In this document: piece after piece, positions 828 through 53,779 of the stretch
Position numbering within the stretch: the first letter of the stretch is position 1
Layout of the letters: the number at the start of each line of letters is the position of its first letter
Assembly: GCA_964035545.1 (NCBI GenBank)
Contig: OZ037770.1
Coordinates: 2,170,001-2,234,000, forward strand
Direction of reading: 5' to 3'
DNA length: 64,000 bases
From: Bugula neritina
Taxonomy: Eukaryota > Animalia > Bryozoa
The notes under the pieces: model-generated
Told to the model about the DNA's origin: nothing
Seen by the model: only the letters and a program-made list of their open reading frames with translations
Databases searched by the model: none
Made by a program: the position numbers and the translations under genes

Positions 828-13482
<12,655 letters not shown>

Positions 13483-38817: not shown

Positions 38818-41800
38818 ATGGCGGAAGCTCACGCCGCTGTAGCCTTCTCTTTCAACGTGACTCCCGAGGGAGTGGACGTCAAGTATAACCATGAGGCTAT
38901 CAAGGCGGTGTGGTTCAGCGGGGTTCATTCCTGGAAACTCCGATTCATCAGGTTCAAAGTGAGTGACTTTATGATATTCCAGCTGGTGTTAACCTTTTCA
39001 AGGATCCTAATAAACCTTGACTCATAAATGAGGAGCTTGCTAGAAGCAGCACCGAGTTGGGGGTGACTGAGTACAGTATATGTACGCACATAGTTGTCCG
39101 AACCCCAGACCTTCTCCAATTCAGTGTAGCTTCTATCGTTTCCCCTGAATGAACTGTTGATTAGCTTTCATCTTTGCAAATCTTTATGTTATGGAAAGCC
39201 TCACTACCAACTCACATTTCTTACTCAGAATTTTTAGTTTTCTGTTACTAAGGCTGACAAGGAGGAAATCTTAGAATTCAAAAGTCATAGCCACCATGTC
39301 TTTATTTGTGTTGCACATTCTTCTGTTTTTATATACACATGGAATATTAGTCATTTACAAGCTGAGAGTTTTATGTATGTTTGTTGTAAAAGGATTGTTT
39401 TCCTTCGTAACCATTTAACCTTTAACCTTTTCATTTCATGTTGACGACTATTTTAATCTTATTCTGAAATGGTTTCAGTTTTCAAATATCGCTTTTTCTA
39501 GAATCGCTGCGTCAACATCCTGTATCCGGCTCCGCCCATGAGCCTCTTTCTCATCACAGCGCTGGTGATGGGCCTACAGCTGTACACGGAGCGAGATCTC
39601 TCGTGTGGAGCTGTTGATTATGCGGCCAGTTTCTTCCCAGAGTGAGTACACATAGTAGGCGGGTGGATTCATCCCCCTCCTTTACCCCTTATTACTAATT
39701 AGGGCCTCGGGTTATCATATTTTAGTAATCAACTTTCACAATATTCAAAGTCCTGCCTTACCAGCTGGTTCATTGCAGGAACTAAACTACACACCAGTTT
39801 CTATCACTGGAATTGTGTAATACTAATGCTATGTACGTACAACTATGTATAGTAGTGAAATATGTTACCTAACACGCAATTAGTACTAGCTGATGAACTT
39901 ATTACGTTTTGCTGCACTTGTTTACAATATCTCATGCTTCGTGTGACATCATTTTATGTTGATTGTAGTCCTATAATGTTTTTATTATGCAAGCTATTGG
40001 TCTTTTTGCATAATAAATACGTTGTTCGAAGTCGTTATCCCTGTGAGAGCCCCCCCCCCTCCCTGATAAGGGTTATATTAGCCTAAGAACTGTGATACAG
40101 GGACTTGTACGTAACTTCACTAAAGACTAAGATACAAACCCTCTTGCCCAGCTAGTACTCTATCTAACCACTGGACCATGCTAATATATTTCACATAAGG
40201 CTTACTTTAATTAGTTCCACATTCTATCACCCCAGCACTTCAACCTCAGCATGTCTTCTCTATATAAACTAAGTTTCTCTAACTTTCTTCATGACCTGAA
40301 AAGACATCCTTCTCTCTGGTCAACTCCTTTGTGTTATAAAAATGAAAAAACTGCCCTTTGTACCCTGTACTCAGTTCTCTACTCTCTTTAAGGGGGTCAG
40401 TCACCCCTCCCTTAACTGGTTCCTATACCTCCCAGGTGTTAAGTACTCTATATCAATGTACTTTGAACTTTCATTTAACCACATGCATGTCCCTTATCTC
40501 CTAGTTAGGTGTCTACGTAGTCTGTCTGTGTGTCCACAATCTTTCTGTGTGTGTATACAGTCTGTCTGTGTGTCCACAGTCTGTCTGTGTGTCCACAGTC
40601 TGTCTGTGTGTCCACAGTCTGTCTGTGTGTCCACAGTCTGTCTGTGTGTCCACAGTCTGTCTGTGTGTCCACAGTCTGTCTGTGTGTCCACAGTCTGTCT
40701 GTGTGTCCACAGTCTGTCTGTGTGTCTACAGCTTGTATTAATATACTTTAGACTTCAAAGGAATATATATCATTGAGTAGCACTGAAATAGGACATTGAC
40801 TGAAGTTTAAGATAATGAAGTTACAGTGCTGTAAGCTGTGGGGGACATTTCTAGTTGGTTTAGCAGAGTTTAATGATGTTGTATTACATACTGTTTGGGG
40901 TATTCTAGGGTTTCAACTCCCACCTCAAACCAACACGCATAGAGGAAGTTAGAGAAGTTAGGCTACATAAATTCGATATGTCATCCAGTATTTTGTATAC
41001 CCTTTGAAAACATAAGATTTTACTTAATCTACTTCAAACAAACATCTAGCATATATCAAACATGAGCTCTTTGGTAGAAGAGGGCACATCTGTCAGCATG
41101 GTGACTAACTGCTTCTATATGCTGGTCTGGCAGCACTTCCTTTGTGATGTCAGCAATAGTCTTGCTGGGGTTCAAACCCCTGATCCACTCTAACCCCTAG
41201 ACCAGATACCTTTTCATGTATGACTCTGTTATGTTACTTTGATTAGCCCTCTATACATTCACAGTGTAGGTAATATTTTCTTGATTTTAAAAACAAATAT
41301 TGGCAGGTTTTAAATTCTCCATTAATATAAATTAACTAACTTCTAGTTGCCTACTAGTCTATACTATAGAACATATATTCACAGTCTAGGTTTAGGAAGT
41401 AGTTTATTATTCTGAAACCAGTATTGGTAAATTTTAAATTTTAAACTACATATATAAACATGGCTGGAGATCCTCAATAACTGATGTTGGGGAAAGCATC
41501 CAGTCATAATTTCTCCTGTGCTATTACTGAAAAAGTCCTTAGCCCAATTTAACATAAAAAACCTTTCCATCAGGGTTTTTTCACAAGGATAATGACTATA
41601 AAATTGCTTGAATTGTTTCAACTTTTACTAATCTACTATCATCTTTTTGGGGATTTCCAACCTAACAGCTGTTAGGAATTCTTTACTCAATGAAGGGGTG
41701 GGCAAATTCATGTGGTTGCTGGAGGTAGGCGAAGTAATGGAGACATTCAGAAAAGCCTGTGTTCTAGATTAGAAATGTAGCATAAGAAATTATGTTCATC

Positions 41801-44800
41801 AAACCAAAATTTAATAATAAAATTAAACAACTTAGGTTATCTCAATTTCTCCACTACTGCCTCATGTTAAGATTCCTGTCTAACATTTGCTGCCGCTGTT
41901 GTAGGTGTGTCCATGAGCAGTGCGAGCTGTTTGCTGCCCTAGTGTTTGGTATAACAGTGTGGGTGGCCTACGTGCTGGTGTGGAGGTACACGCTAAAACT
42001 GCTCTTCCTCAACCACTCCTGGATGTACTCCCCTCACGGTAAAATGAGTCTCCCCAACAAGGTCTGGGTGGTGATTGTCAGCCTCATCAAGGGGAGGAAA
42101 CCCCTGCTCTTCAGCTTTCAGGCAGCGTTACCCAAGTTACCAGTTCCTAGCCTCAGGTCTACACAGAAAAGGGTGAGTTCTCAGGCTAAGTTGAGTTGAG
42201 CTGCTATTTACTTACTTGTTGGTTAATTTACTTACTTTTCTACTTACTTATTTGGTTACTTGCTTATTTACTTACTTTACTCTTTCACTTATTTACTTAC
42301 TTACTTCTTTACTTACTTACATCTTTACTCACTTACTCACTTACTTATTTACTTACTTACTTCTTTACTTACTTACTTACTGACTTATTCATTCACTCTG
42401 TCTCTTCATTTCTTGACTATGGTTGCCCTCTATAGTTTAATGTTTCTAATTTCATTTCCTTAATTGCAGGAAATTTAAAATATTGATTATTTAATTTTTC
42501 AATTCACTTCATAGGCTGAACGTGTCTCAACTAATATGTAAATACTGGTAGTTTATTCCACAAATAATCTAGGTTTGCTGGTAAAATATGATTTGCAAAA
42601 TTATTGGCTTTTTGTGTGAACATTTTATTTTGTGGTGGTTATGGCCTATCAACCAAAGTATATATAGAAAATTCCAAGATGTTCCCTGTGCAGCCTTTTA
42701 TGTCCCAACCCTAAATATATTAAGAGGTTTAAAGAACTCGAGCTATTAGAGTTTCTTCACTGCAGCAGCTAAATGCAATATTGCAGCTAGTAACTTGCGT
42801 GTCTGTTATTTTCATTCACTAATAATTAGTTTCTGCAGTTACATTGTGTGCAGATAAAGTGGAGAAAAATCTTATATTTTATTTTTAATTAAAATTTTTT
42901 CATTTCTTCCAAGTGTTTGCGGTGACAGAGTTGAGAGCATTTGTTTTAAGTATCCACTCCTGTGAGAACCCCTGATTGTAGGGGGCTAAGAGGTTGTTTT
43001 CACTTTGGTAAAGAAATTATGAGTTTAACTCAATTCAATTAACTTTGCATGTCATGGATTACAAGGATTACAAGTTACAGTGCAGTAAATTGAGTAAAGC
43101 TAGCTAACCAATAACCAAATCAATTGTACCGTTTGTATATAAATTAGTAAATATTCTAAGTATGCAGTTATTATGTAAGACTTGACCACTTTGCAGTTCA
43201 CTGACTTATAAATAGTAACAAATCCAGTTATTTATCTCAGCCGTTCAACTCGCCCTTCTGTATTTGGCTGAGTGCCAATACTAACTAATAATAGCTACTA
43301 ATTCAACTATTGAAACACGGTGTAATAATTACGCAGTGAATGTAAATAGTTTATTCAACTTTTAATAGACTTTATTCCATAAAGCATTAAGTTTAGTTTA
43401 GTTTAGTTGGTTTCCCTTCAACTAACCTGAATATACAGTTCACTGGACAGGCAATCTTAGCAAGTCTTATTAATTTGCTTGCAACTAAACTAGCGCAGCA
43501 CAGTTGTATGCAAAATGATATTTCTGTGCCTGTGAATTACCGCCTTTCAACTTGAAGTAGTGTTCTGTTTGATAAATAGAATCATTATAGATCAGGGGAA
43601 ATAATTTCTCAATGATTTCCGGTGGAATTCAAACCCTGTTGGCTCAATGTTAATCAGACCGGTTTCTCTTTGGGCTGTTTTATAGTTGGCCCAGTTTAAA
43701 AAAAGCATATTTATGGTTTTAGTTCCCCACTCTTGTACTCTACATTTCAAACCAGTTTAATACAAGAAATGAAGTATGGCCATATTTATGTTTAATATTT
43801 TATGATCGCCAGGCCAGTTGTTAGTCACTGTAATAACTTTTGTTGTTTTTCACTTCATTCAATACTATTCCAGATACTATACTTTACTTTTTAATTGATT
43901 ATCTTTCTTAACGCTCCTCAAAACTTGTTGAAAATTGATTAAATTTGTTGATTAATTAGATTACATCCTTAGGGAGCAGTTATCATCCATTCTTCTTAGC
44001 AGTAACCTGGCATTCTTGTATAAAAAAATGCAATTAATTCAGTTCCAGCTACTTTAGTATAGAGGTGCAGAACTTTGCTTAGCTTGTGCTCTTAGTATAG
44101 CTGTAATGGCCTTATTTCACAACTTCTTGAGTTACAAATATTAATCAAAACTAGGGCTATTGGGGGATAATGTAACTCTGCAACTGCCCTGTTACAGCTC
44201 AGTGCAGTGTCGACTGGTAACAATTAGTATGCTGCCTTTTTCACACAAATGCTCATTGGCAGCCATCCTTGGGGAAATCGCAGTGGGATTTAGTACATGT
44301 GTACTTGCACTGTGTACTTTAACACACAGGATGTGGTGGGGGGATAATTCTGAACCCTGAAATTAACGCCTAGTATTTCCTGTGAAGCACAGGCTGTGTT
44401 TGTTACCAGTTTGTGAACAGATGGACTTTGAATTCAAAGTTTTGCTTTTTGTTGGACATGAGCCAGAAGTTTCACGAGCTGAATGCCAAATAGAATTTTT
44501 CAACATTATTAGCATTTTCTCTCAATACTGCCATTTACTTGCCTTTAATTTCAGAAACTAGTACTCAAGTCTAGCTAAAACGATTTAGTTATTTTAACTT
44601 CTTTATATTTTAATTCTACTTGTTTTATTTATGATATTATTTTATCAACATGGGCAACCGATCTGCAGCAAGTTTGTTCTAACTAGTTAAAGATTTTGTC
44701 ACCTCTCATTTTATGTCATGATAAATTCCTCGTTTACCCATTTTTCTAAGTATAAAGATAATGAATGCAAATGAATTCTATAAAACAAGACGTGATATTA

Positions 44801-46816
44801 TCTAGATACCTTATATAAAGTTGAAGTATAACATTTAGGCTTCCTAGTGAGCTAGGCAACTATTTTACTTTGTATAATACACATGGCATGAGTCAGTATA
44901 TAGCGTGACTCCAGTGTTGTGGTATTTACTACATATATGATATAGAGCAGGGTTTATCTAGTCCCATAACTTTGTATATAGCCAGTATCTCCTGTATTGT
45001 TAGCTTTCTCGTGTATTTTGGTAACGTGCCACATGATAGCATCCAAGTATAAAGTTGGTTCAGTAAATTGGAAAATGTAGCATCAGAAGTTATGTTCTCT
45101 TTCGGATTCGAACCTTTGCCTAAACCGAAATTCATAAATCAAGTTATGATGAGTTGATAGTTGTTTCCAAACTACTAAAAATAAAGGTAAATGGTAGACA
45201 GGCAGCTTTTGTTCATTTAATTTAAATTTAATTTGGAGTTGTTGTCCTTTTTCCTGTAGTACTTGAAGTCAGTGCGACCATTACTCAGTGACATTGAGTA
45301 TGACAGGATGTCGAAGCTAGCAGACGACTTCTTTGGTGGTATTGGTAAGAAGTTACAGCGATATTTGATCCTCAAGTCATGGTGGTCCACCAACTACGTC
45401 ACTGATTGGTGGGAAGAGTATGTCTACCTTCGTGGGAGGTCTCCCATTATGGTCAACTCCAACTATTACGGCCTGGTGGGTGGTCTGATGATTATTCTTT
45501 ACCTATTTTACTGTTTCATGTTACGTGTGATGTTTTATAAAGTTTTAATATTCTTTATTAGTTTTATTTATAATTTCTCGGGTTGATTTACCTCCATTTT
45601 TGTGAAGTTTTTGTACTTTTTCAAAAAAGTAAATGTGAATTTTATACCTTCTTAACTATCACACTTTTGTTCTAACGGTTTCTATGTTACTTTATCATTA
45701 TTCTAGTTATATAAATTGCATTGACTTAAGTCCACTTCAAATGATGTGCATCTGTATTAATTTATTTTTAAATATTTCTATCAAATAACAATCGTGGATG
45801 TTTTTTCAATAGCTCATTGGTTGCATAGCATTATACTGAATATGAATTTATTTAGACATGAAAACCAGTTGCAGGCTGTTTGAAACTAATGGTTGGTCAT
45901 TTTTTTCTGTTATCAATACAAGATGATGAGAAAAAGTGTGGATAACTCTAAATTTATGTTTCATTTCAGGACGTCATCTTTGTCCACCCGACTCACATCC
46001 AAGCAGCCAGAGCTGGGAACATGGTCTATGCGTTCCTTAAGTTCAGGGAGCAGATAGAGCACGAGACTCTAGAGCCGGTATCAACTTACCTTTTGTCTTT
46101 ACTTACCTTTTGGTTTGACTTAAGTTGCGTTTATACCTCTGCTGAAAAAAGTACCGAGTTTAAGTTAATAATGCTTGTCCGGGTACCCCTTTATAGTCAA
46201 ACTGAAAATCGTTGAAATCATATTGATGCGGCTGCTCACTTTCTGAAATTGAAATTTGACTCGCATAATAGCTATTAGATGCCCTTTGTAATCGTCGTGA
46301 ATTAGTGAAGCGGAAAGCATAAAAGCGATAATTGAGAAGGCGTAGGCTATATAATTATAACCGTATAAGTACGTTGTCTAATTGCCAAAGTAATAACTAA
46401 ATAACGATGTTTACAAGGAGTTATTAGTCCTATTCTAAAATTGGCCTATTAAGTTATCACAGTACAAAAATTTCAACGAGTGGCTTTTACAATGCAATGC
46501 AATGCAAATTTCAACCCGGCCAAATTGAATTTTTGACCGAAAATCGTGAAGGTATAAACGCAACTTTACTTTTTACTTTACTTACCTTTTGGCTTGATTT
46601 ACTTATCAATTCGTACCTACTTCAGTCATGCATACATATATTGAGTAGGAAGTTATCTCCACTCTCTTAGTGAGTATAAAGTGACACATGTCAGTGTAAC
46701 ACAGCAAATCTTCTTTCACTGTAGTTGTTAGTCAACAGGACTGTACCACTTGACTCTGTGCAGTATGAGAGACTCTTCAACACAACTAGGATACCTGGTG
46801 TAGAGACGGGTGAGTG

Positions 46817-46862
<46 letters not shown>

Positions 46863-46884
46863 CAGTAGCAGTAGCAGTAGCAGT

Positions 46885-46945
<61 letters not shown>

Positions 46946-49900
46946 GCAGCCGCAGCCGCAGCCGCAGCCGCAGCCGCAGCCGCAGCCGCAGCCGCAGCCG
47001 CAGCCGCAGCCGCAGCCGCAGCCGCAGTAGCAGTAGTAGTAGCAGTAGTAGTCGTAGTAATAGTACTACTACTACTACTAGTAGTAGTAGTACCAGTAAT
47101 ATTAGTAGTAGTACTAGTAGTAGTAGTAGTACTACTACTAGTAGTAGTAGTACCAGTAGTATTAGTAGTAGTACTAGTAGTAGTTGCTCTCAAAGCTGTG
47201 CTAATCATTTTATATTTGACCTTCAGACATCCTTGAGCACATCAATGGCGTCACTCACATAGCAGTGCTCAGCAAGGGCCGCTACTACAAAGTCTACACA
47301 CACGATCACGGACGACTCCTTCAACCCAGAGACCTTGAAAGGTCAGTTCACACTACGTACTCAATTCCCGCTCAGATTTAATATGAAATGTTGATATCAG
47401 ATGATTTGATGTTGATTTTCCTGTAGGGTTTTCCAGCAGATCATAGATGACCCCAGTGAGCCACTGAAGGGGGAGGAGAGATTAGCCGCCCTCACTGCCG
47501 GAGAGAGAGTGCCCTGGGCTAAGGCTAGGAAGACGTATTTCGCTACCGGCGTCAACAGAGCCTCTCTCTCGACTATCGAGAAAGCCGCCTTCGTTTTGGT
47601 TTTAGACGACGTTGACTACAATTTCTCTGCGGTTCGTATTTCTATCATTCGTTAGTTCCAACTTGTTTATTCAGTATGAAGTTTAATAAAGGTTTTTGCA
47701 AGAATTGAATTCAGAAGTAAAATTCCAATATTAGATTTCACCATGTTTGTGCAAAGGAATTTCGTAGACTAAGATCTAGTTGATGCAGTCAGGGGAGACA
47801 AATCTTCCTGACTCAGTTTAATGAGTCGTTTCTCTCAAGGATAAGCTCTGCCTTTAAAGGCTTGATATTTTCTCTTAAGATCTTTCGTGTTTTTTACTAG
47901 ATACATGGTCACATGAAAGATGCTTACCCTTCTAGAATATTCCACCACCTTCTAGAATATTCCACTACCTTCTAGAATGCACCATAATGACAGTATGTTA
48001 TTCTAGGAAGATCAAGACGCTCTGAGTGATTTTGCCAAGGCCATGCTGCACGGGAACTGTTATAATAGATGGTTTGATAAGTCCTTCACCCTTGTCATCT
48101 CGGCCAATGGGAGAGTAGGTTTCAATGCAGAGCACTCCTGGTAAGTGTTATCATATATTAGTGATGTCATCAGTTTGTGCTCATGTGTCATAATTACTTG
48201 AATATTGACTCTATGAACCTCACAACAGCATTGTGTATTTGACTTTGATCATGTGACATGTCACATGATCAAAGTCAACTTTTTCCAATGGTAATGTCTT
48301 TTCGTCTATCGCTTGGAGACTGGTCAGTTGATCGTAATATATTTGTAATTAGTTTCATACATTTACTCTCCATCCAGCTGAAAACTCAACCAATCATTGT
48401 CTTGAAGTGAATCATTATTCAACCAATAATATAAGGAATGCTGCTTTGTTCAGCAAGTTGAAAGTTTCGGCCAATGGTGGTCATACCAATTCATTCAGCC
48501 AATAATATGTTAGCTTTCGTTAATCGGCCAATGATGTGTTAGCTTTCGTTAATCGGCCAATGAGATATCAATACGCTAGTATTCGTGCAGGGCTGATGCT
48601 CCAATCATGGCGCAGATCTGGGAGGAAGGATTCTCCCATGAGACGATTGACATGGGGTGAGAACAGGTGTTGAGTTTTTCCGGAAGCTTCTCTGCACTCA
48701 TCATTTCCTGTTTGTTCTGCTGTGTAAACACCACACTCTTTGGTTGTTTGGACCTTCGATATTCTCACAGCTTGCTGTCTAACCGTTGTTGTGAATAGTT
48801 GTGTGTTAGCGGCAGCCCTAGCAGCAACATCAGCGCTGCCTCTGTTGTCCTTTTCTGAACTACGTCCACTTTCTATTGAAATATATTCAATTTCCTTTAA
48901 AAAAAGTGTTCTAAATTTTAGTGATATGATATGAAATGTGGGCGGAGTTTAGTGACACTTGCGGGTACGATGGGTTAGCATGAGTTCTCGTATTACCTAC
49001 GTTATTTTAACAGGGCGGACGCTCCCGTTATAGCCCAGGCATGGGAGAGTAACATAGCCTTAGACCTGGAGTCAAAAGGGTATTATATGTTTATACACAT
49101 CAGGGGGTCAATCACTTGGGGCTTTGCTGCGTTTGACCTTGGTATGACCTTGTCAGCAGTAGTTCTGTGATTGGCCTCTTGCTCTGTGTGGTTCTCTGCT
49201 GGCTCCGTTTTCACCTTCTAAGGGTCAAGGTCTACCCCGGTCAAACATTTCTGCTGAAAAGCCGCTTTCCACAATAAAAGAAATTTCCAGCTTTTGGAAA
49301 AATTTATAACAAATGTCATGTTTCTATAAAAACCGGTGTGTAGACCTTGATCCTAGGTTAGGCATGTGTTAGGGTGTCCTCTGCATACCCCCTCTATCGC
49401 CATGTGAATGTATAGCCTTAAAACTGTCTGTGTCAAGCCTCTACTATCTTTGCTCCAGCTTCGACGCTCCCATCTACTCCCAACTCTGGGAGCAGTACAT
49501 TGCCCTTGACCTGGAGATATACGGGTAACCGCCCTTTTACCTCGCCCAAGCTTTAGTTCACCGCTAGTTTATTTAGTCGTATTGGCAAAATTTAAGCTCA
49601 GCTTTCTAATTGAATATAAACTTGTTTTTACTATATGTATGCAGGAAAATGTGTAAACTTCAGGAATTAAGCTTAACTCTGATTTGTATATCTGCAATAG
49701 AATAGAAATTCATTTTTACCTTCATGAAAAAAATGCCTATGTGAAACTCATTTTTCATTTTTGGCAATTGGCATCCCAAAAAATATAAGCAGAAAATTAT
49801 GAGAATGCATTTATAAATCTTTTAAGCGGAATTATTTCACTCAGTACTTCAATACAACATGTAATCAGAGGTGTGTAAATGGATACTTCTGTTGACTGTT

Positions 49901-52900
49901 TACATATACAGGTTGCTTGTTTGACACAAATTCCCATGAGACCAATAGCTAGCATCCATCACATTGCGCTGTAACACTATTATATGTTATATAAATATCG
50001 AATATGTCTAGTTAATACTCAGTATGTAATATAAAGTTATTATTGACGGACAGTTGGAAACTAAACCCTGGTGTAATGATTAGTATAATTGGAGTTGCCA
50101 TGGTAACTTGTCATTACAAGAAACCTGCATTTGTTAAACATCAATCTTTCACTCAAAGGCGTATAATATGCATCTTTATATGCTTATATGTCTTTATATG
50201 CTTATATGTTCGCTCTGCTTGCTTACTTCTCTTTCCTAGCTATACTTCTGTTTCTTGTAATACTAACTTTAAAACCCTACACTTACTATTGCTTTATTCT
50301 TTATCTACTAACACGTTTAACACAAAATTTTAATTAATTTCAAGTATTAGTTTTTTATCAGCTAAATTAAAAATCATGTCGGCTTGTTTACCTTGTTGCT
50401 TGGTAACCAGATGCTGTAGTCCTGCACAAATTCCCTGAAAGACAAGTATTTTTCGGTTTAAGGATTTGTCCTATCAATTTAAACATCTAAATAATGCGAC
50501 TATCACCCAATAAAATGCTAAATTTTCCAAAATTTATTCAAATTTCCTTACGTTTGTTTGAAATTTCTCTTTCACTCAACAGATATACTGAAGATGGCCA
50601 CTGCAAAGGGGAATTGTCATCCCGAAATATCCGTCCAATCAGATTACAGTGGGATATTCCCAGCGAGTGTGTAGACGTCATTGATTCTAGCCTCAGGACT
50701 GCCCAAGCTATCGCCAACGATGTCGACCTCTTTATTCAGGTTGGTGGAGCTCAGACTATCTACTACTTCATTTGTATTTGTTAGAACTCAGTCTTTCAAC
50801 TTATCCTATGCGAGCTCAGTTATGTAACACAGTTGGTTATAGTTTACTTGTTTGTATATTTACAGTCATCTTCATTTTAATCATTCATATTTTACTTTTT
50901 TGCCAATTGTTTACCTTTTATTGTTTCTTTCTTTTTATTTTATTTGACTTACTGTTTGATTGCTTTTTCTGCAGGTCCACAATCACTTTGGTAAAGGAAT
51001 CATCAAGAAATGTAAGATTAGTCCAGATGCGTTCATTCAGCTGGCTCTTCAGCTGGCCTATTACAGAGTAAGTTATATTACAGAGTAAGTTATACTACAG
51101 AGTAAGTTATACTACAGAGTAAGTTATATTACAGAGTAAGTTATACTACAGAGTAAGTTATACTACAGAGTAAGTTATAATACAGGGTAAGTTATATTAC
51201 AGAGTAAGTTATACTACAGAGTAAGTTATATTACAGAGTAAGTTATACTACAGAGTAAGTTTTACTACAGAGTAAGTTATACTACAGAGTAAGTTATACT
51301 ACAGAGTAAGTTATACTACAGAGTAAGTTATATTACAGAGTAAGTTATACTACCGAGTAAGTTATACTACAGAGTAAGTTATACTACAGAGTAAGTTATA
51401 TTACAGAGTAAGTTATACTACAGAGTAAGTTATAATACAGAGTAAGTTATACTACAGAGTAAGTTATACTACAGAGTAAGTTATACTACAAAGCATTTCT
51501 TTTTCTTTAAACTCCCCTTCACAAACCACACCCACTTGTTTTCACAAACTCCGCCCCTTGTTTCTGTAGGATGCCGGAAAGTTCTGCCTGACGTATGAGG
51601 CTTCCATGACTAGACTGTTCAGAGAGGGACGTACAGAGACGGTCAGGTCCTGCACAGTGGAGTCCAGCGCCTTCGCTAAGGCAGTGTGCGAGGGAGAAAA
51701 GTCTGACGAGGAGCTCAAGAAGCTGCTACTCAAGGCTTGCGAGGTTCACCAGACAGGATACAGGGACGCCATGACTGGCAAGGGTAGGTGTGGCCTGTTC
51801 CAGGAGTAGGCGGGGCTTGATAAATAAGTGAAGTTAGATGCTATCTGCTGCAGTAAGGCTTACAGCTAGATTGGTTTGAATACACAATGGGTGCGGCCTA
51901 ATACTAAGATAGGTGTGGCCTGATGTACTAAAGTGAGTGTGACCTAATTTCAAAGAGAGGGTGGTCTATTTTGTGCACCTTCTTCAGTAAAGATTTCAAC
52001 CTCAACTTATACATACATATTTTTGATATTTTATATAAGTAATATTTACATTTCATTCTAAATATTCAATTGTATCGACCTGTATTTACTTGTAAGTTAG
52101 TTCTTCGTTTGGTTTTTTTACTTACAGGTACCTTTAGGTACATGCCTACTTACATATACATGTAAATATTTACTTTTTGTCACACGCATGTGTAGATACT
52201 TGTGTATTTCACAGGCATAGACCGTCACATGTTCTGTCTGTACGTCGTCTCCAAGTACTTGGGAGTCGAGTCCCCCTTCCTCAGTGAAGTTCTGAGTGAA
52301 CCGTGGAGACTGAGCACCAGTCAGGTAGCCTCAAATCTCTAGATTAAGATTTCTAATTATATTAATTGATAAAAATGAATAAAATGGAAACACTTTTGTT
52401 TACTACTTTATTGTAACAGAGGTTTACCGAGATTTTACAAAAGATAGCAATTATTTGTAATTTAACAGTATTCCTCAGTTTAAATATATTCTTATGGGCT
52501 GGTAGCTTCATTAAAAATAAATAAACAAAAAGCATGTTTTTCTTTTACTCTATTTATCTTCATAAACAAAGTAAACTTACAGTTAGGCTACCACCGTATC
52601 CATCCTCAGAGTTACTTGAATAAAATTTTAAAGCTAAAACATGAAACTGTTTGCATGACAGAAGGTAAAAGAGTGGAGGGTATCTTATTACAGTTGAATA
52701 ACAAAACAACATTTCCTATATTTTTTTAGGTAAATAAAGTAATAAACAAATTTTGTTCCTGTTCGCTTATTTTTAATGAAATTTTTAGTCTGTAATGATA
52801 TGTTGAAAATAGTTAGGTTTTTTCTAACAATATGTATATTAGTTTCACACTGTGTTTCCTAGCATGCATTATGTAAATAGATTTTTCATTGATGTTTGGA

Positions 52901-53779
52901 ACCAGTTACATCAGTGAAACCACAACAGTAAATTCATGCAAACCGAAACCACAAATTCATCTATATGAGCATCCACTAACATAATGTGAAGTAATGGACA
53001 GCAGTTTTAGACAATATATATTCACACAACCTAATTGTATTTCTCTCACTTTCCACTCTGCTTGCAGACTCCCCACTCACAGATGAACAAAATCAACTTA
53101 ACCAAGTACCCTAACCACGTGTGTACTGGGGGTGGGTTCGGACCCGTCTCCAACGACGGATATGGAGTTTCGTATATTATCGCCGGAGAAGATATGATAT
53201 TCTTCCACATTTCCTCTAAGAGATCGTGTGCAGCCACTGTGAGTATTTGTCCTAGGCCTTCTATAGTCTATAATTATGTCTCTTTTCTTCGACCTTGACC
53301 CACATAGTATCTAATTGCTCTCGGCATGCATTAAATGTTAGCCCGAATGTCTTAATCTCCTAATTAAATGTTAAAGTTATGTGGCTATGAATATTCATTG
53401 GCTCTGTAGCTGGTAGCTCATCTCTCTGTGTTGTTGCAGCCTTCAGAGTAGCACTTAGTATACTCTGCTTGACTTTAACCATCAGCAATGTATTCTCTGA
53501 TCCTTCTGGAATATTCTAGAGATACTCCTCCATCTCTCGCTAAGCCGCAGGTCCTGAAACTAGATATAACTCACGGATCCGTTGTGTTTGTTCAGTTTGC
53601 CCATATAAGCCATAAAACGGGGGGGGGGGGATCAAAGCCTTTCTCGTGAATTCTTGTCAGAGCGCTGTACAGAGACTCAAATCTCACAATTGCTTGTCTT
53701 TCTGTTGCAGGACTCTAAAGGATTCGCCAAGAAGATTGTAGCAGCCATGGCTGATTTGAGGAAGATATGCGGACAGTAA
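38818..53779 (+). CDS. CPT1: Carnitine O-palmitoyltransferase 1 (763 aa per isoform)
   Basis: Exons 38818-38958, 39502-39641, 41905-42172, 45260-45475, 45970-46077, 46725-46809, 47227-47341, 47427-47631, 48007-48140, one of (48591-48656, 49014-49079, 49459-49524), 50583-50739, 50975-51067, 51570-51783, 52215-52324, 53068-53238, 53711-53779; all GT-AG, phases match, total 2292 nt. Motifs: [11 protein letters not shown]-terminus, [26 protein letters not shown], catalytic [41 protein letters not shown]. Confidence 0.97.
40517..40731. repeat. 19-bp minisatellite (CACAGTCTGTCTGTGTGTC), about 11 copies
   Basis: Direct reading; intronic. Confidence 0.92.
42205..42390. repeat. (TTAC)n imperfect microsatellite
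   Basis: Starts about 30 nt after the donor at 42173. Confidence 0.85.
46122..46566. mobile_element. MITE with 17-bp TIRs (possibly Kolobok-like)
   Basis: AAGTTGCGTTTATACCT at 46122-46138 and its exact reverse complement at 46550-46566; TTAA-like left flank. Confidence 0.65.
46810..47183. repeat. Compound (AGT)n(AGC)n(AGCCGC)n microsatellite filling a CPT1 intron
   Basis: Begins at the donor GTGAGT (46810) and occupies about 90% of intron 46810-47226. Confidence 0.95.
48591..48656 (+). CDS. CPT1: CPT1 alternative exon A: (W)[22 protein letters not shown]
   Basis: gtgcag| 66 nt |gtgaga, phase 2-2. Confidence 0.9.
49014..49079 (+). CDS. CPT1: CPT1 alternative exon B: (W)[22 protein letters not shown]
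   Basis: taacag| 66 nt |gtatta, phase 2-2. Confidence 0.88.
49459..49524 (+). CDS. CPT1: CPT1 alternative exon C: (C)[22 protein letters not shown]
   Basis: ctccag| 66 nt |gtaacc, phase 2-2. Confidence 0.88.
51059..51490 (+). repeat. 17-bp minisatellite (TAYTACAGA|GTAAGTTA), about 25 copies: amplified CPT1 exon-intron junction
   Basis: First copy is the last 9 nt of exon 50975-51067 plus the first 8 intron nt. Confidence 0.96.

What the first reader, a model, noticed from the sequence alone, without database searches (positions are those of the whole stretch)
48007..50739. Three mutually exclusive exons rewrite the CPT1 active-site segment
Seen: after the exon ending ..AEHS-TG| come three paralogous 66-nt, phase 2-2 exons with intact splice sites and no stops. 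They give [28 protein letters not shown] or [14 protein letters not shown]. Exon C changes even the split codon (TGG to TGC) and puts Phe in the HxxxD motif, recalling carnitine octanoyltransferase (HAPFD). None is in the ORF track. Known: Drosophila's single CPT1 uses two mutually exclusive exons in this region, which change kinetics; vertebrates have three CPT1 genes instead. Inference: one gene makes three catalytically distinct enzymes. Since each exon keeps frame, exclusivity needs an active mechanism rather than NMD.
Basis: partly seen in the sequence, partly recalled or inferred. Interest (0 to 1): 0.85.

Follow-up and report, generated by a model that had tools for sequence, protein, structure and literature searches.

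The report
Three alternative active-site exons in CPT1
A moss-animal gene for the enzyme that lets fatty acids into mitochondria carries three interchangeable copies of the small exon next to its catalytic histidine; this is a local expansion of an old two-copy switch that I found across protostome invertebrates, and no RNA data could be obtained to show how the copies are used.

Summary
A complete CPT1 gene (window about 38818-53776, + strand) has three tandem 66-nt, phase 2-2, stop-free AG/GT exons directly after the exon that ends at the catalytic His: A 48591-48656, B 49014-49079, C 49459-49524. Exon C gives Cys-Phe where CPT1 normally has Trp-Ala.

All three look like real coding exons. 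An unnamed relative from metagenome contigs has the same A/B/C cluster, including the Cys-Phe exon. Its introns cannot be aligned with ours. Synonymous sites are saturated, while non-synonymous divergence of A, B and C (0.14-0.26) matches the constitutive neighbour exon.

The cluster is not peculiar to this animal or to Drosophila. Two copies sit at the same junction in a brachiopod, three annelids, a scallop and a crab. A clam has three candidates.

Double inclusion stays in frame. Skipping all copies makes TG+A = TGA, and that A is present in every cluster-bearing locus examined.

I found no docking/selector RNA pairing, no U12-type sites and no steric limit, so the selection mechanism is open.

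Verdict: a new variant of a known kind, of moderate interest.

The parts
38818..53776 (+). CPT1 gene (ATG to stop), at least 17 coding exons recovered
   Evidence: PF00755 hits exon by exon. tblastn of crab CPT1 P0016 covers residues 1-46 and 117-768 at 58% identity.
48007..48140 (+). Constitutive exon ending in the catalytic His (..NAEHS) plus TG of a split codon
   Evidence: It aligns to CPT2 structures up to EHSW.
48591..48656 (+). Alternative exon A (66 nt, phase 2-2; [12 protein letters not shown]..)
   Evidence: Orthologues in relatives sp2 (L017 274-339) and sp3 (L024 237-302), pN 0.14-0.26 against saturated pS.
49014..49079 (+). Alternative exon B (66 nt; [12 protein letters not shown]..)
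   Evidence: Orthologues L017 913-981, L024 591-656 and L033 411-476; pN 0.16-0.22.
49459..49524 (+). Alternative exon C (66 nt; split codon TG+C = Cys, then [11 protein letters not shown]..)
   Evidence: Orthologues with the same Cys-Phe start in sp2 (L017 2139-2210, 72 nt) and in a sibling (L033 858-923, one residue different). Against sp2, pN is 0.21 and pS about 1.
50583..50739 (+). Constitutive downstream exon. Its first base A completes Gly after any alternative exon and makes TGA if all are skipped.
   Evidence: The A is present in all cluster-bearing loci read directly and is inferred for Daphnia from a CGA codon in a cDNA.
48657..48850 (+). Intronic block just downstream of exon A, almost invariant against the sibling species (candidate splicing control element)
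   Evidence: Perfect runs of 57 (starting inside exon A), 39 and 87 nt. Intron A-B is 92.8% identical, while the other introns are 82-85%. There is no unusual fold (z 0.25).
49103..49177 (+). Stable hairpin 25-100 nt downstream of exon B, in a block conserved in the sibling species
   Evidence: MFE -39.5 kcal/mol, z -2.55, 6 of 200 shuffles fold as well. Conserved runs 49096-49162. Suggestive only.
49362..49366 (+). GCATG (Rbfox-type word) 97 nt upstream of exon C
   Evidence: sp2 has TGCATG 87-88 nt upstream of its exon C in an otherwise unalignable intron. The aligned blocks are CTGCAT and ACTGTCT. Weak evidence.

Best explanation
This is the CPT1 gene of a bryozoan. The organism is taken from earlier notes of this scan and was not checked by me.

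The 22-residue stretch that follows the catalytic histidine is encoded three times. It includes the conserved Asp at His+4, the Pro at His+6 and the following xWE segment. I propose that the spliceosome includes exactly one of exons A, B or C in each mRNA, which gives three enzymes with the same scaffold but a different active-site wall.

A resembles the usual protostome first exon. B and C are related to each other in their 3' halves. C replaces Trp-Ala after His-Ser by Cys-Phe.

The cluster is an expansion of an ancient two-exon switch found across protostomes. In Drosophila that switch yields isoforms of different activity and is steered by SR proteins and nutrition.

An mRNA that skips all copies is neutralised by the TGA created at the junction. 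An mRNA with two copies stays in frame, so it must be prevented by the splicing machinery. The most likely means are trans-acting factors acting on conserved intronic blocks, not base-paired docking and selector sites.

Shown here: exon anatomy, conservation, purifying selection on all three exons, phyletic spread, and the TGA rule.
Inferred: one exon per mRNA, distinct kinetics, and the regulators.
For: - Anatomy and frames.
- CPT1 identity.
- Exon C conserved with its Cys-Phe start, AG/GT sites and phase in two other species.
- Introns not alignable with sp2.
- Over 19 codons, win-C against sp2-C has 3 identical, 9 synonymous and 7 non-synonymous codons.
- Nei-Gojobori pN is 0.21 for C, 0.14-0.26 for A, 0.16-0.22 for B and 0.18-0.26 for the constitutive exon, with pS 0.6-1.1.
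- Crab proteins in one 90% cluster differ only in exactly this 22-residue segment.
- Two tandem exons at this junction in Lingula, Owenia, Paralvinella, Pecten, Scylla and Capitella; three candidates in Mercenaria.
- A as first base of the downstream exon in every cluster-bearing locus, G in the single-exon nemertean.
- Drosophila 6A/6B differ in activity and respond to 9G8, Tnpo-SR, PKA and starvation: PMC10879661.
- Human variants P479L and L484P are reported to lower activity or stability (PMC10076611). By my count from the catalytic His473 they fall inside this segment.
Against: - No transcript-derived protein of this species turned up in three protein searches.
- 30 of 202 full-length protein models from other species contain both exons in tandem. 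Double inclusion may therefore occur in nature, or may be a gene-prediction artefact.
- No cis element explaining exclusivity was identified.
- A third relative (sp3) has only A and B, so C is not needed by all members of the group.
Confidence: 0.7

Rival explanations
1. Exon C makes a catalytically weak or inactive isoform that acts as a regulator or sensor, in the manner proposed for vertebrate CPT1C. On this view it is not a third tuned transferase.
For: Trp-Ala at His+2/+3 is nearly universal. Among about 270 CPT1 sequences I saw only aromatic replacements of the Trp and one Leu-Cys, and never Cys-Phe. sp3 does without exon C.
Against: Asp at His+4, Pro at His+6 and the xWE motif are kept in C, and C is as constrained as A and B. 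Phe at His+3 is compatible with catalysis in choline acetyltransferase (HSPFD).
Confidence: 0.15
2. The exons are not strictly exclusive. Two or three are often co-included, giving longer in-frame proteins, or the choice is leaky and without function.
For: Each exon is a multiple of 3 nt, and the GG+G and GG+C joins read Gly, so co-inclusion is in frame. Many annotated models in insects, molluscs, an annelid and a brachiopod hold both exons.
Against: The copies encode the same structural element next to the catalytic His, and a duplicated element has no place in the solved folds of the family. Curated crab and bee isoforms of normal length contain one or the other. Separate purifying selection on each copy is not expected if they were read only as a tandem insert.
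Confidence: 0.1
3. One of the three copies, most likely C, is an unused pseudo-exon left by a recent duplication.
For: No expression data. The acceptor of A and the donor of C are not strong consensus sites.
Against: C keeps its open frame, phase, AG/GT and Cys-Phe start in a species whose synonymous sites are saturated against ours, with pN 0.21 equal to the constitutive exon. In the sibling species exon C is 95.5% identical, against 82-84% for the introns on either side of it.
Confidence: 0.05

Closest known systems
Drosophila CPT1 (withered) exons 6A/6B (Price et al. 2010, as cited in PMC10879661 and PMC3793950)
   Same: Alternative homologous exons in the single-exon-sized segment by the active site of CPT1. 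The isoforms differ in activity and tissue use. The choice is steered by SR proteins and feeding state.
   Different: Two exons there and three here, and the third carries Cys-Phe after His-Ser. I could not read the 2010 paper or a fly locus. Positional identity is therefore shown through crab, bee and other arthropod proteins, not through Drosophila itself.
Two-exon CPT1 clusters of other protostomes (crab Scylla, Lingula, Owenia, Paralvinella, Capitella, Pecten), found here in genome loci
   Same: Same junction (HS + TG | exon | GG or equivalent + A), same phase, and lengths of 60-66 nt.
   Different: These have two copies. The second copy is usually 60-63 nt. None has Cys-Phe. The clam Mercenaria has three candidates, but all are of the W-A/G-D type.
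Vertebrate CPT1A/B/C gene family
   Same: Several CPT1 enzymes with different kinetics from one ancestral gene.
   Different: Vertebrates use whole-gene duplicates, not exon duplicates. This genome uses both routes: it also has a second CPT1 gene on contig C3.
Docking-site/selector RNA pairing clusters (Dscam1 exon 6, 14-3-3 xi, Mhc; from general knowledge)
   Same: Tandem arrays of homologous exons, of which one is chosen.
   Different: No shared docking sequence was found. The best three-way complementarity equals the mean of shuffled controls, and no block pair reaches z below -2.7.
Choline acetyltransferase active-site motif HSPFD (PDB 2fy2, 1t1u, 1q6x)
   Same: Phe at His+3 and Asp at His+4, as in exon C.
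   Different: His+2 is Pro there and Cys in exon C. The rest of exon C is CPT1-like (DAP..Q.WE). This is a resemblance in one position, not membership.

Membership tests
CPT1 (carnitine O-palmitoyltransferase 1) | Carnitine/choline acyltransferase domain (PF00755) along the gene | tested here: met
   Exon-by-exon hits on contig C6 at 2215260-2223238 (window 45260-53238), best E 2.8e-22.
CPT1 (carnitine O-palmitoyltransferase 1) | CPT1-specific N-terminal regulatory segment and membrane-spanning region | tested here: met
   Window 38818-38955 matches crab CPT1 residues 1-46 at 54%, and 41960-42172 matches residues 117-191. The homologues carry PF16484. The first transmembrane exon was not located.
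CPT1 (carnitine O-palmitoyltransferase 1) | Catalytic His in the E-H-S-W-A-D-A-P context | tested here: met
   The upstream exon ends AEHS, and exons A and B supply WADAP. Exon C supplies CFDAP, which is a departure at His+2/+3.
CPT1 (carnitine O-palmitoyltransferase 1) | Closest relatives are CPT1 and not CPT2, CrAT, COT or ChAT | tested here: met
   The best full-length match is crab CPT1 at 58%. The other family members of this genome show HSWGDG, HSPAEG and HSPSEG.
Mutually exclusive exon cluster | Tandem homologous exons of equal phase with their own splice sites | tested here: met
Mutually exclusive exon cluster | Each copy is maintained by selection | tested here: met
Mutually exclusive exon cluster | Exactly one copy in each mature mRNA | not testable with these tools
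No transcript-derived protein of this species was found.
Mutually exclusive exon cluster | A known enforcing mechanism (frame/NMD, steric hindrance, U2/U12 incompatibility, or competing RNA pairing) | tested here: inconclusive
   Skipping gives TGA. Double inclusion stays in frame. Introns A-B and B-C are 357 and 379 nt, so there is no steric limit. All donors are GT of U2 type. No pairing rises above shuffled controls.
Orthologue of the arthropod CPT1 6A/6B switch | Same exon junctions relative to the catalytic His | tested here: met
   Crab isoforms differ in exactly W..G after EHS. The Scylla locus has 66+66 nt exons between ..AGCTG|gt and ag|A.
Orthologue of the arthropod CPT1 6A/6B switch | One-to-one orthology of A, B and C with arthropod exon types | not tested
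   22 residues are too few for a reliable exon tree. B and C share their 3' halves, but signs of concerted evolution in sp2 blur the order of events.

The most novel reading that the evidence does not exclude
Exon C is a substrate-specificity switch and not merely a kinetic variant. By replacing Trp-Ala at His+2/+3 with Cys-Phe (Phe being the choline acetyltransferase state), one outer-membrane CPT1 gene would make an enzyme with a different acyl-chain or acceptor preference, or a redox-sensitive one through the new Cys beside the catalytic His. The ancient cluster as a whole would be guarded by a TGA fail-safe kept at a synonymous site since the protostome ancestor.
Probability: 0.2. Interest if true: 0.75.

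Novelty: new variant of a known kind. Interest (0 to 1): 0.5.

Why it matters
CPT1 is the control point of mitochondrial fatty-acid oxidation. Vertebrates diversified it by gene duplication, and flies by a two-exon switch.

This locus shows three things:
- The exon switch is much older and wider than the Drosophila case. I found it in brachiopod, annelid, mollusc, crustacean and bryozoan-type genomes.
- The switch can expand.
- Selection has kept a copy that alters the two residues beside the catalytic His. I saw that change in none of about 270 CPT1 sequences.

This gives enzymologists a natural three-state series for the segment that I place around the human P479L and L484P variants.

For splicing research it offers a cluster in which frame cannot enforce exclusivity, while a conserved junctional TGA removes the all-skipped product.

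It also flags a recurrent annotation error: 30 of 202 full-length models fuse both exons.

Tried and rejected

2. Transcript-derived proteins of this species. Three searches found none: the crab query restricted to the region, the 52-residue downstream exon (which returned only a genomic ORF from a sibling species), and a two-row alignment of crab CPT1 plus one window exon (whose top 120 hits were all arthropods).

3. An 18-row alignment of all exons against crab CPT1 (A1) was badly misaligned and was not used for any search. The exons were never joined into a spliced model, and no search was run with a joined sequence.

4. Docking/selector pairing. Whole-intron duplexes gave z between -2.1 and +1.7. 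The best 16-mer able to pair with two or three other introns scored the same as shuffled controls. Conserved-block pairs gave z of -2.7 or weaker over 55 comparisons. I rejected this as unsupported; it is not disproved.

5. U12-type or AT-AC incompatibility and steric hindrance were rejected from the splice sites and intron lengths.

6. The eight CCAAT words in the intron before exon A are not present in relatives. They come from a local tandem repeat, so they are probably not a conserved signal.

7. The Price 2010 paper is not held. Literature searches found no description of this cluster outside Drosophila.

8. The alignments shown covered CPT2, ChAT and CrAT only.
Full report
**1. What is there**

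The window holds a complete CPT1 gene on the + strand.
- Pfam PF00755 matches it exon by exon at window 45260-53238.
- tblastn with the closest full-length relative, crab CPT1 P0016 at 58% identity, recovers 17 coding segments. They run from the start codon at 38818 to the last residues near 53767, and the open frame ends at 53776.

The exon 48007-48140 ends with the codons for AEHS plus TG. The His is the catalytic residue of the family and aligns to EHSW of the CPT2 structures.

Three 66-nt exons follow: A at 48591-48656, B at 49014-49079 and C at 49459-49524.
- Each has AG before it and GT after it, and each is open in phase 2-2.
- Joined singly between the constant exons, each gives an uninterrupted frame.
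- A and B begin W-ADAP.
- C begins with C, so the split codon reads Cys, and it continues FDAP.
- A scan for further AG/66 nt/GT windows and for the motif in all six frames found no fourth copy.

**2. Are all three real exons?**

A scan of metagenome contigs with the 52-residue downstream exon returned eight loci from unnamed relatives.

*sp2 (L017, L018, L020; downstream exon 77% identical)*
- It has the same three-exon array, with lengths 66, 69 and 72 nt.
- Its third exon again starts with C and reads Cys-Phe-Asp-Ala-Pro.
- Outside the exons the two species cannot be aligned.
- Over the first 19 full codons, our C and sp2 C have 3 identical codons, 9 codons that differ synonymously and 7 that change the residue.

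| Exon | pN (Nei-Gojobori) |
|---|---|
| C | 0.21 |
| A | 0.14-0.26 |
| B | 0.16-0.22 |
| Constitutive downstream exon | 0.18-0.26 |

Synonymous sites are saturated (pS 0.6-1.1). Exon C is therefore as constrained as an exon that is certainly used.

*Sibling species (L033; 88% nucleotide identity over 2.5 kb)*
- It has B and C intact, with one residue change each.
- Its exons are 92-96% identical to ours, against 82-85% for most introns.

*sp3 (L023, L024)*
- It has only A and B, with no C in the 1-kb intron that follows.
- Exon C is therefore younger than, or was lost from, part of the group.

**3. How old is the switch?**

- The 90% cluster of crab CPT1 proteins contains two forms that differ only in the 22 residues after EHS.
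- Among 120 relatives retrieved with names, many models are about 22 residues longer because both exons were fused in tandem. These include bees, ants, thrips, a stick insect, a springtail, amphipods and a mantis shrimp. They also include Lingula, Paralvinella, Lymnaea, Biomphalaria and Mercenaria.
- In total, 30 of 202 full-length models show this fusion.

I read the genomic loci directly:

| Species | Alternative exons (nt) |
|---|---|
| Lingula | 66 + 63 |
| Owenia | 66 + 60 (second copy unannotated) |
| Paralvinella | 66 + 63 |
| Pecten | 66 + 63 |
| Scylla | 66 + 66 |
| Capitella | 63 + 63 (first copy unannotated) |
| Mercenaria | three candidates: 63, 66, 60 |
| Tubulanus (nemertean) | one exon only |

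The two-exon cluster is thus a protostome-wide feature, and the present locus is an expansion of it.

The library holds the Drosophila work only through citing papers. [quoted passage not shown] I found no paper describing the cluster outside flies.

**4. A second CPT1 gene**

The genome (216 Mb; earlier notes of this scan call it a bryozoan, which I did not check) has seven loci of the acyltransferase family.
- One, on contig C3, is a second CPT1. It has the same HS+TG junction and a 66-nt exon of the usual kind.
- It also has a 63-nt AG/GT candidate that has lost the Trp of the xWE motif.

**5. What polices the splice choice?**

- Double inclusion stays in frame, because each exon is a multiple of three and the GG+G and GG+C joins read Gly.
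- Skipping all copies joins TG to the A at 50583 and creates TGA.
- That first base is A in every locus read directly that has a cluster:
  - our gene, the C3 paralog and the eight related contigs;
  - Lingula, Owenia, Paralvinella, Pecten, Mercenaria, Scylla and Capitella.
- It is also inferred for Daphnia from a CGA codon in a cDNA contig.
- The single-exon nemertean has G.
- Amphipod proteins imply a pyrimidine, because their first exon ends in TG.
- The position is a synonymous third base of Gly, and A is not the usual first exon base. I read this as selection for a stop in the all-skipped mRNA. The sample of independent lineages is small.
- Introns A-B and B-C are 357 and 379 nt, so there is no steric limit. 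All donors are ordinary GT sites.
- Tests for a docking site shared by several introns gave scores equal to shuffled controls. Duplex energies between introns or between conserved blocks were unremarkable.

What does stand out:
- About 190 nt directly after exon A are almost invariant against the sibling species. This block has no special fold.
- A stable hairpin lies after exon B (z -2.55).
- A GCATG word lies about 90 nt before exon C in both our species and sp2.

These are candidates for factor-driven control, as in the fly, but nothing more can be said.

**6. What the variants may do**

- The segment holds Asp at His+4, Pro at His+6 and the xWE motif. All three are kept in A, B and C.
- A review lists human CPT1A P479L (about 22% residual activity) and L484P (reduced stability) (PMC10076611). 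Counting from the catalytic His473 named in that review, I place both inside this segment.
- Solved-structure sequences show HSWGD in CPT2, HSPFD in choline acetyltransferase and HAAAE in carnitine acetyltransferase. Phe at His+3 is therefore compatible with catalysis in this fold.
- Among about 270 CPT1 sequences inspected, I saw Phe, Tyr or Leu in place of the Trp and one Leu-Cys pair. I never saw Cys-Phe.
- Distinct kinetics for A, B and C are thus plausible but remain inferred.

**7. Limits**

- No RNA data could be obtained.
- The exons were searched one by one by reference and were never joined. The joined-model search was left out.
- The relatives come from unnamed metagenome contigs.
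- Exon orthology across phyla rests on position, phase and short motifs.

**8. Verdict**

The locus is a lineage-specific three-copy variant of an ancient, widely conserved CPT1 exon switch, with an unusual and selectively maintained Cys-Phe copy. It is of moderate interest.

Noticed in passing
G000 contig C3, locus L011 6900-8900: A second CPT1 paralog with the same HS+TG junction. It has one normal 66-nt exon (7562-7627) and a 63-nt AG/GT candidate (8126-8188) that has Gly instead of the Trp of the xWE motif and ends in AA, not GG. This candidate may be decaying, or it may be a radical variant.
   Followed up: partly
window 48380-48570: Eight CCAAT words where 0.4 are expected, in the intron before exon A. 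They arise from a 29-nt tandem repeat whose core (TCGGCCAATG) copies a piece of the upstream exon (48100-48112). They are absent from the relatives' partial introns.
   Followed up: partly
window 48239-48278: A perfect 20+20 nt palindrome with no loop in the intron between the constant exon and exon A.
   Followed up: no
window 46804-47259: A long trinucleotide-type microsatellite inside a CPT1 intron, which reads as poly-Ser, poly-Ala or poly-Val in different frames.
   Followed up: no
window 50020-50140 and 50772-50854: Further intronic blocks that are nearly invariant against the sibling species (L033), while the surrounding intron is about 84% identical.
   Followed up: no
L032 59367-59426 (Mercenaria mercenaria CPT1 locus): A third, unannotated 60-nt candidate exon (W-GDAPIMAHMWE..) behind the two exons that the NCBI model fuses in tandem. 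The clam may also have a three-copy cluster.
   Followed up: partly
proteins P0181, P0194, P0199-P0200, P0204-P0205, P0216, P0225, P0243, P0270 and others: 30 of 202 full-length public CPT1 models from protostomes contain both alternative exons in tandem (about 22 extra residues). This is probably a recurrent gene-prediction error at this cluster.
   Followed up: partly
L026 25364-25423 (Owenia) and L034 3550-3612 (Capitella): Unannotated second or first copies of the alternative exon lie in the introns of the public gene models.
   Followed up: partly
window 51059-51490: Short repeats of an exon-edge fragment downstream of the exon at 50963-51067. The end of L033 matches five places here. This is the subject of another note on this window.
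   Followed up: no
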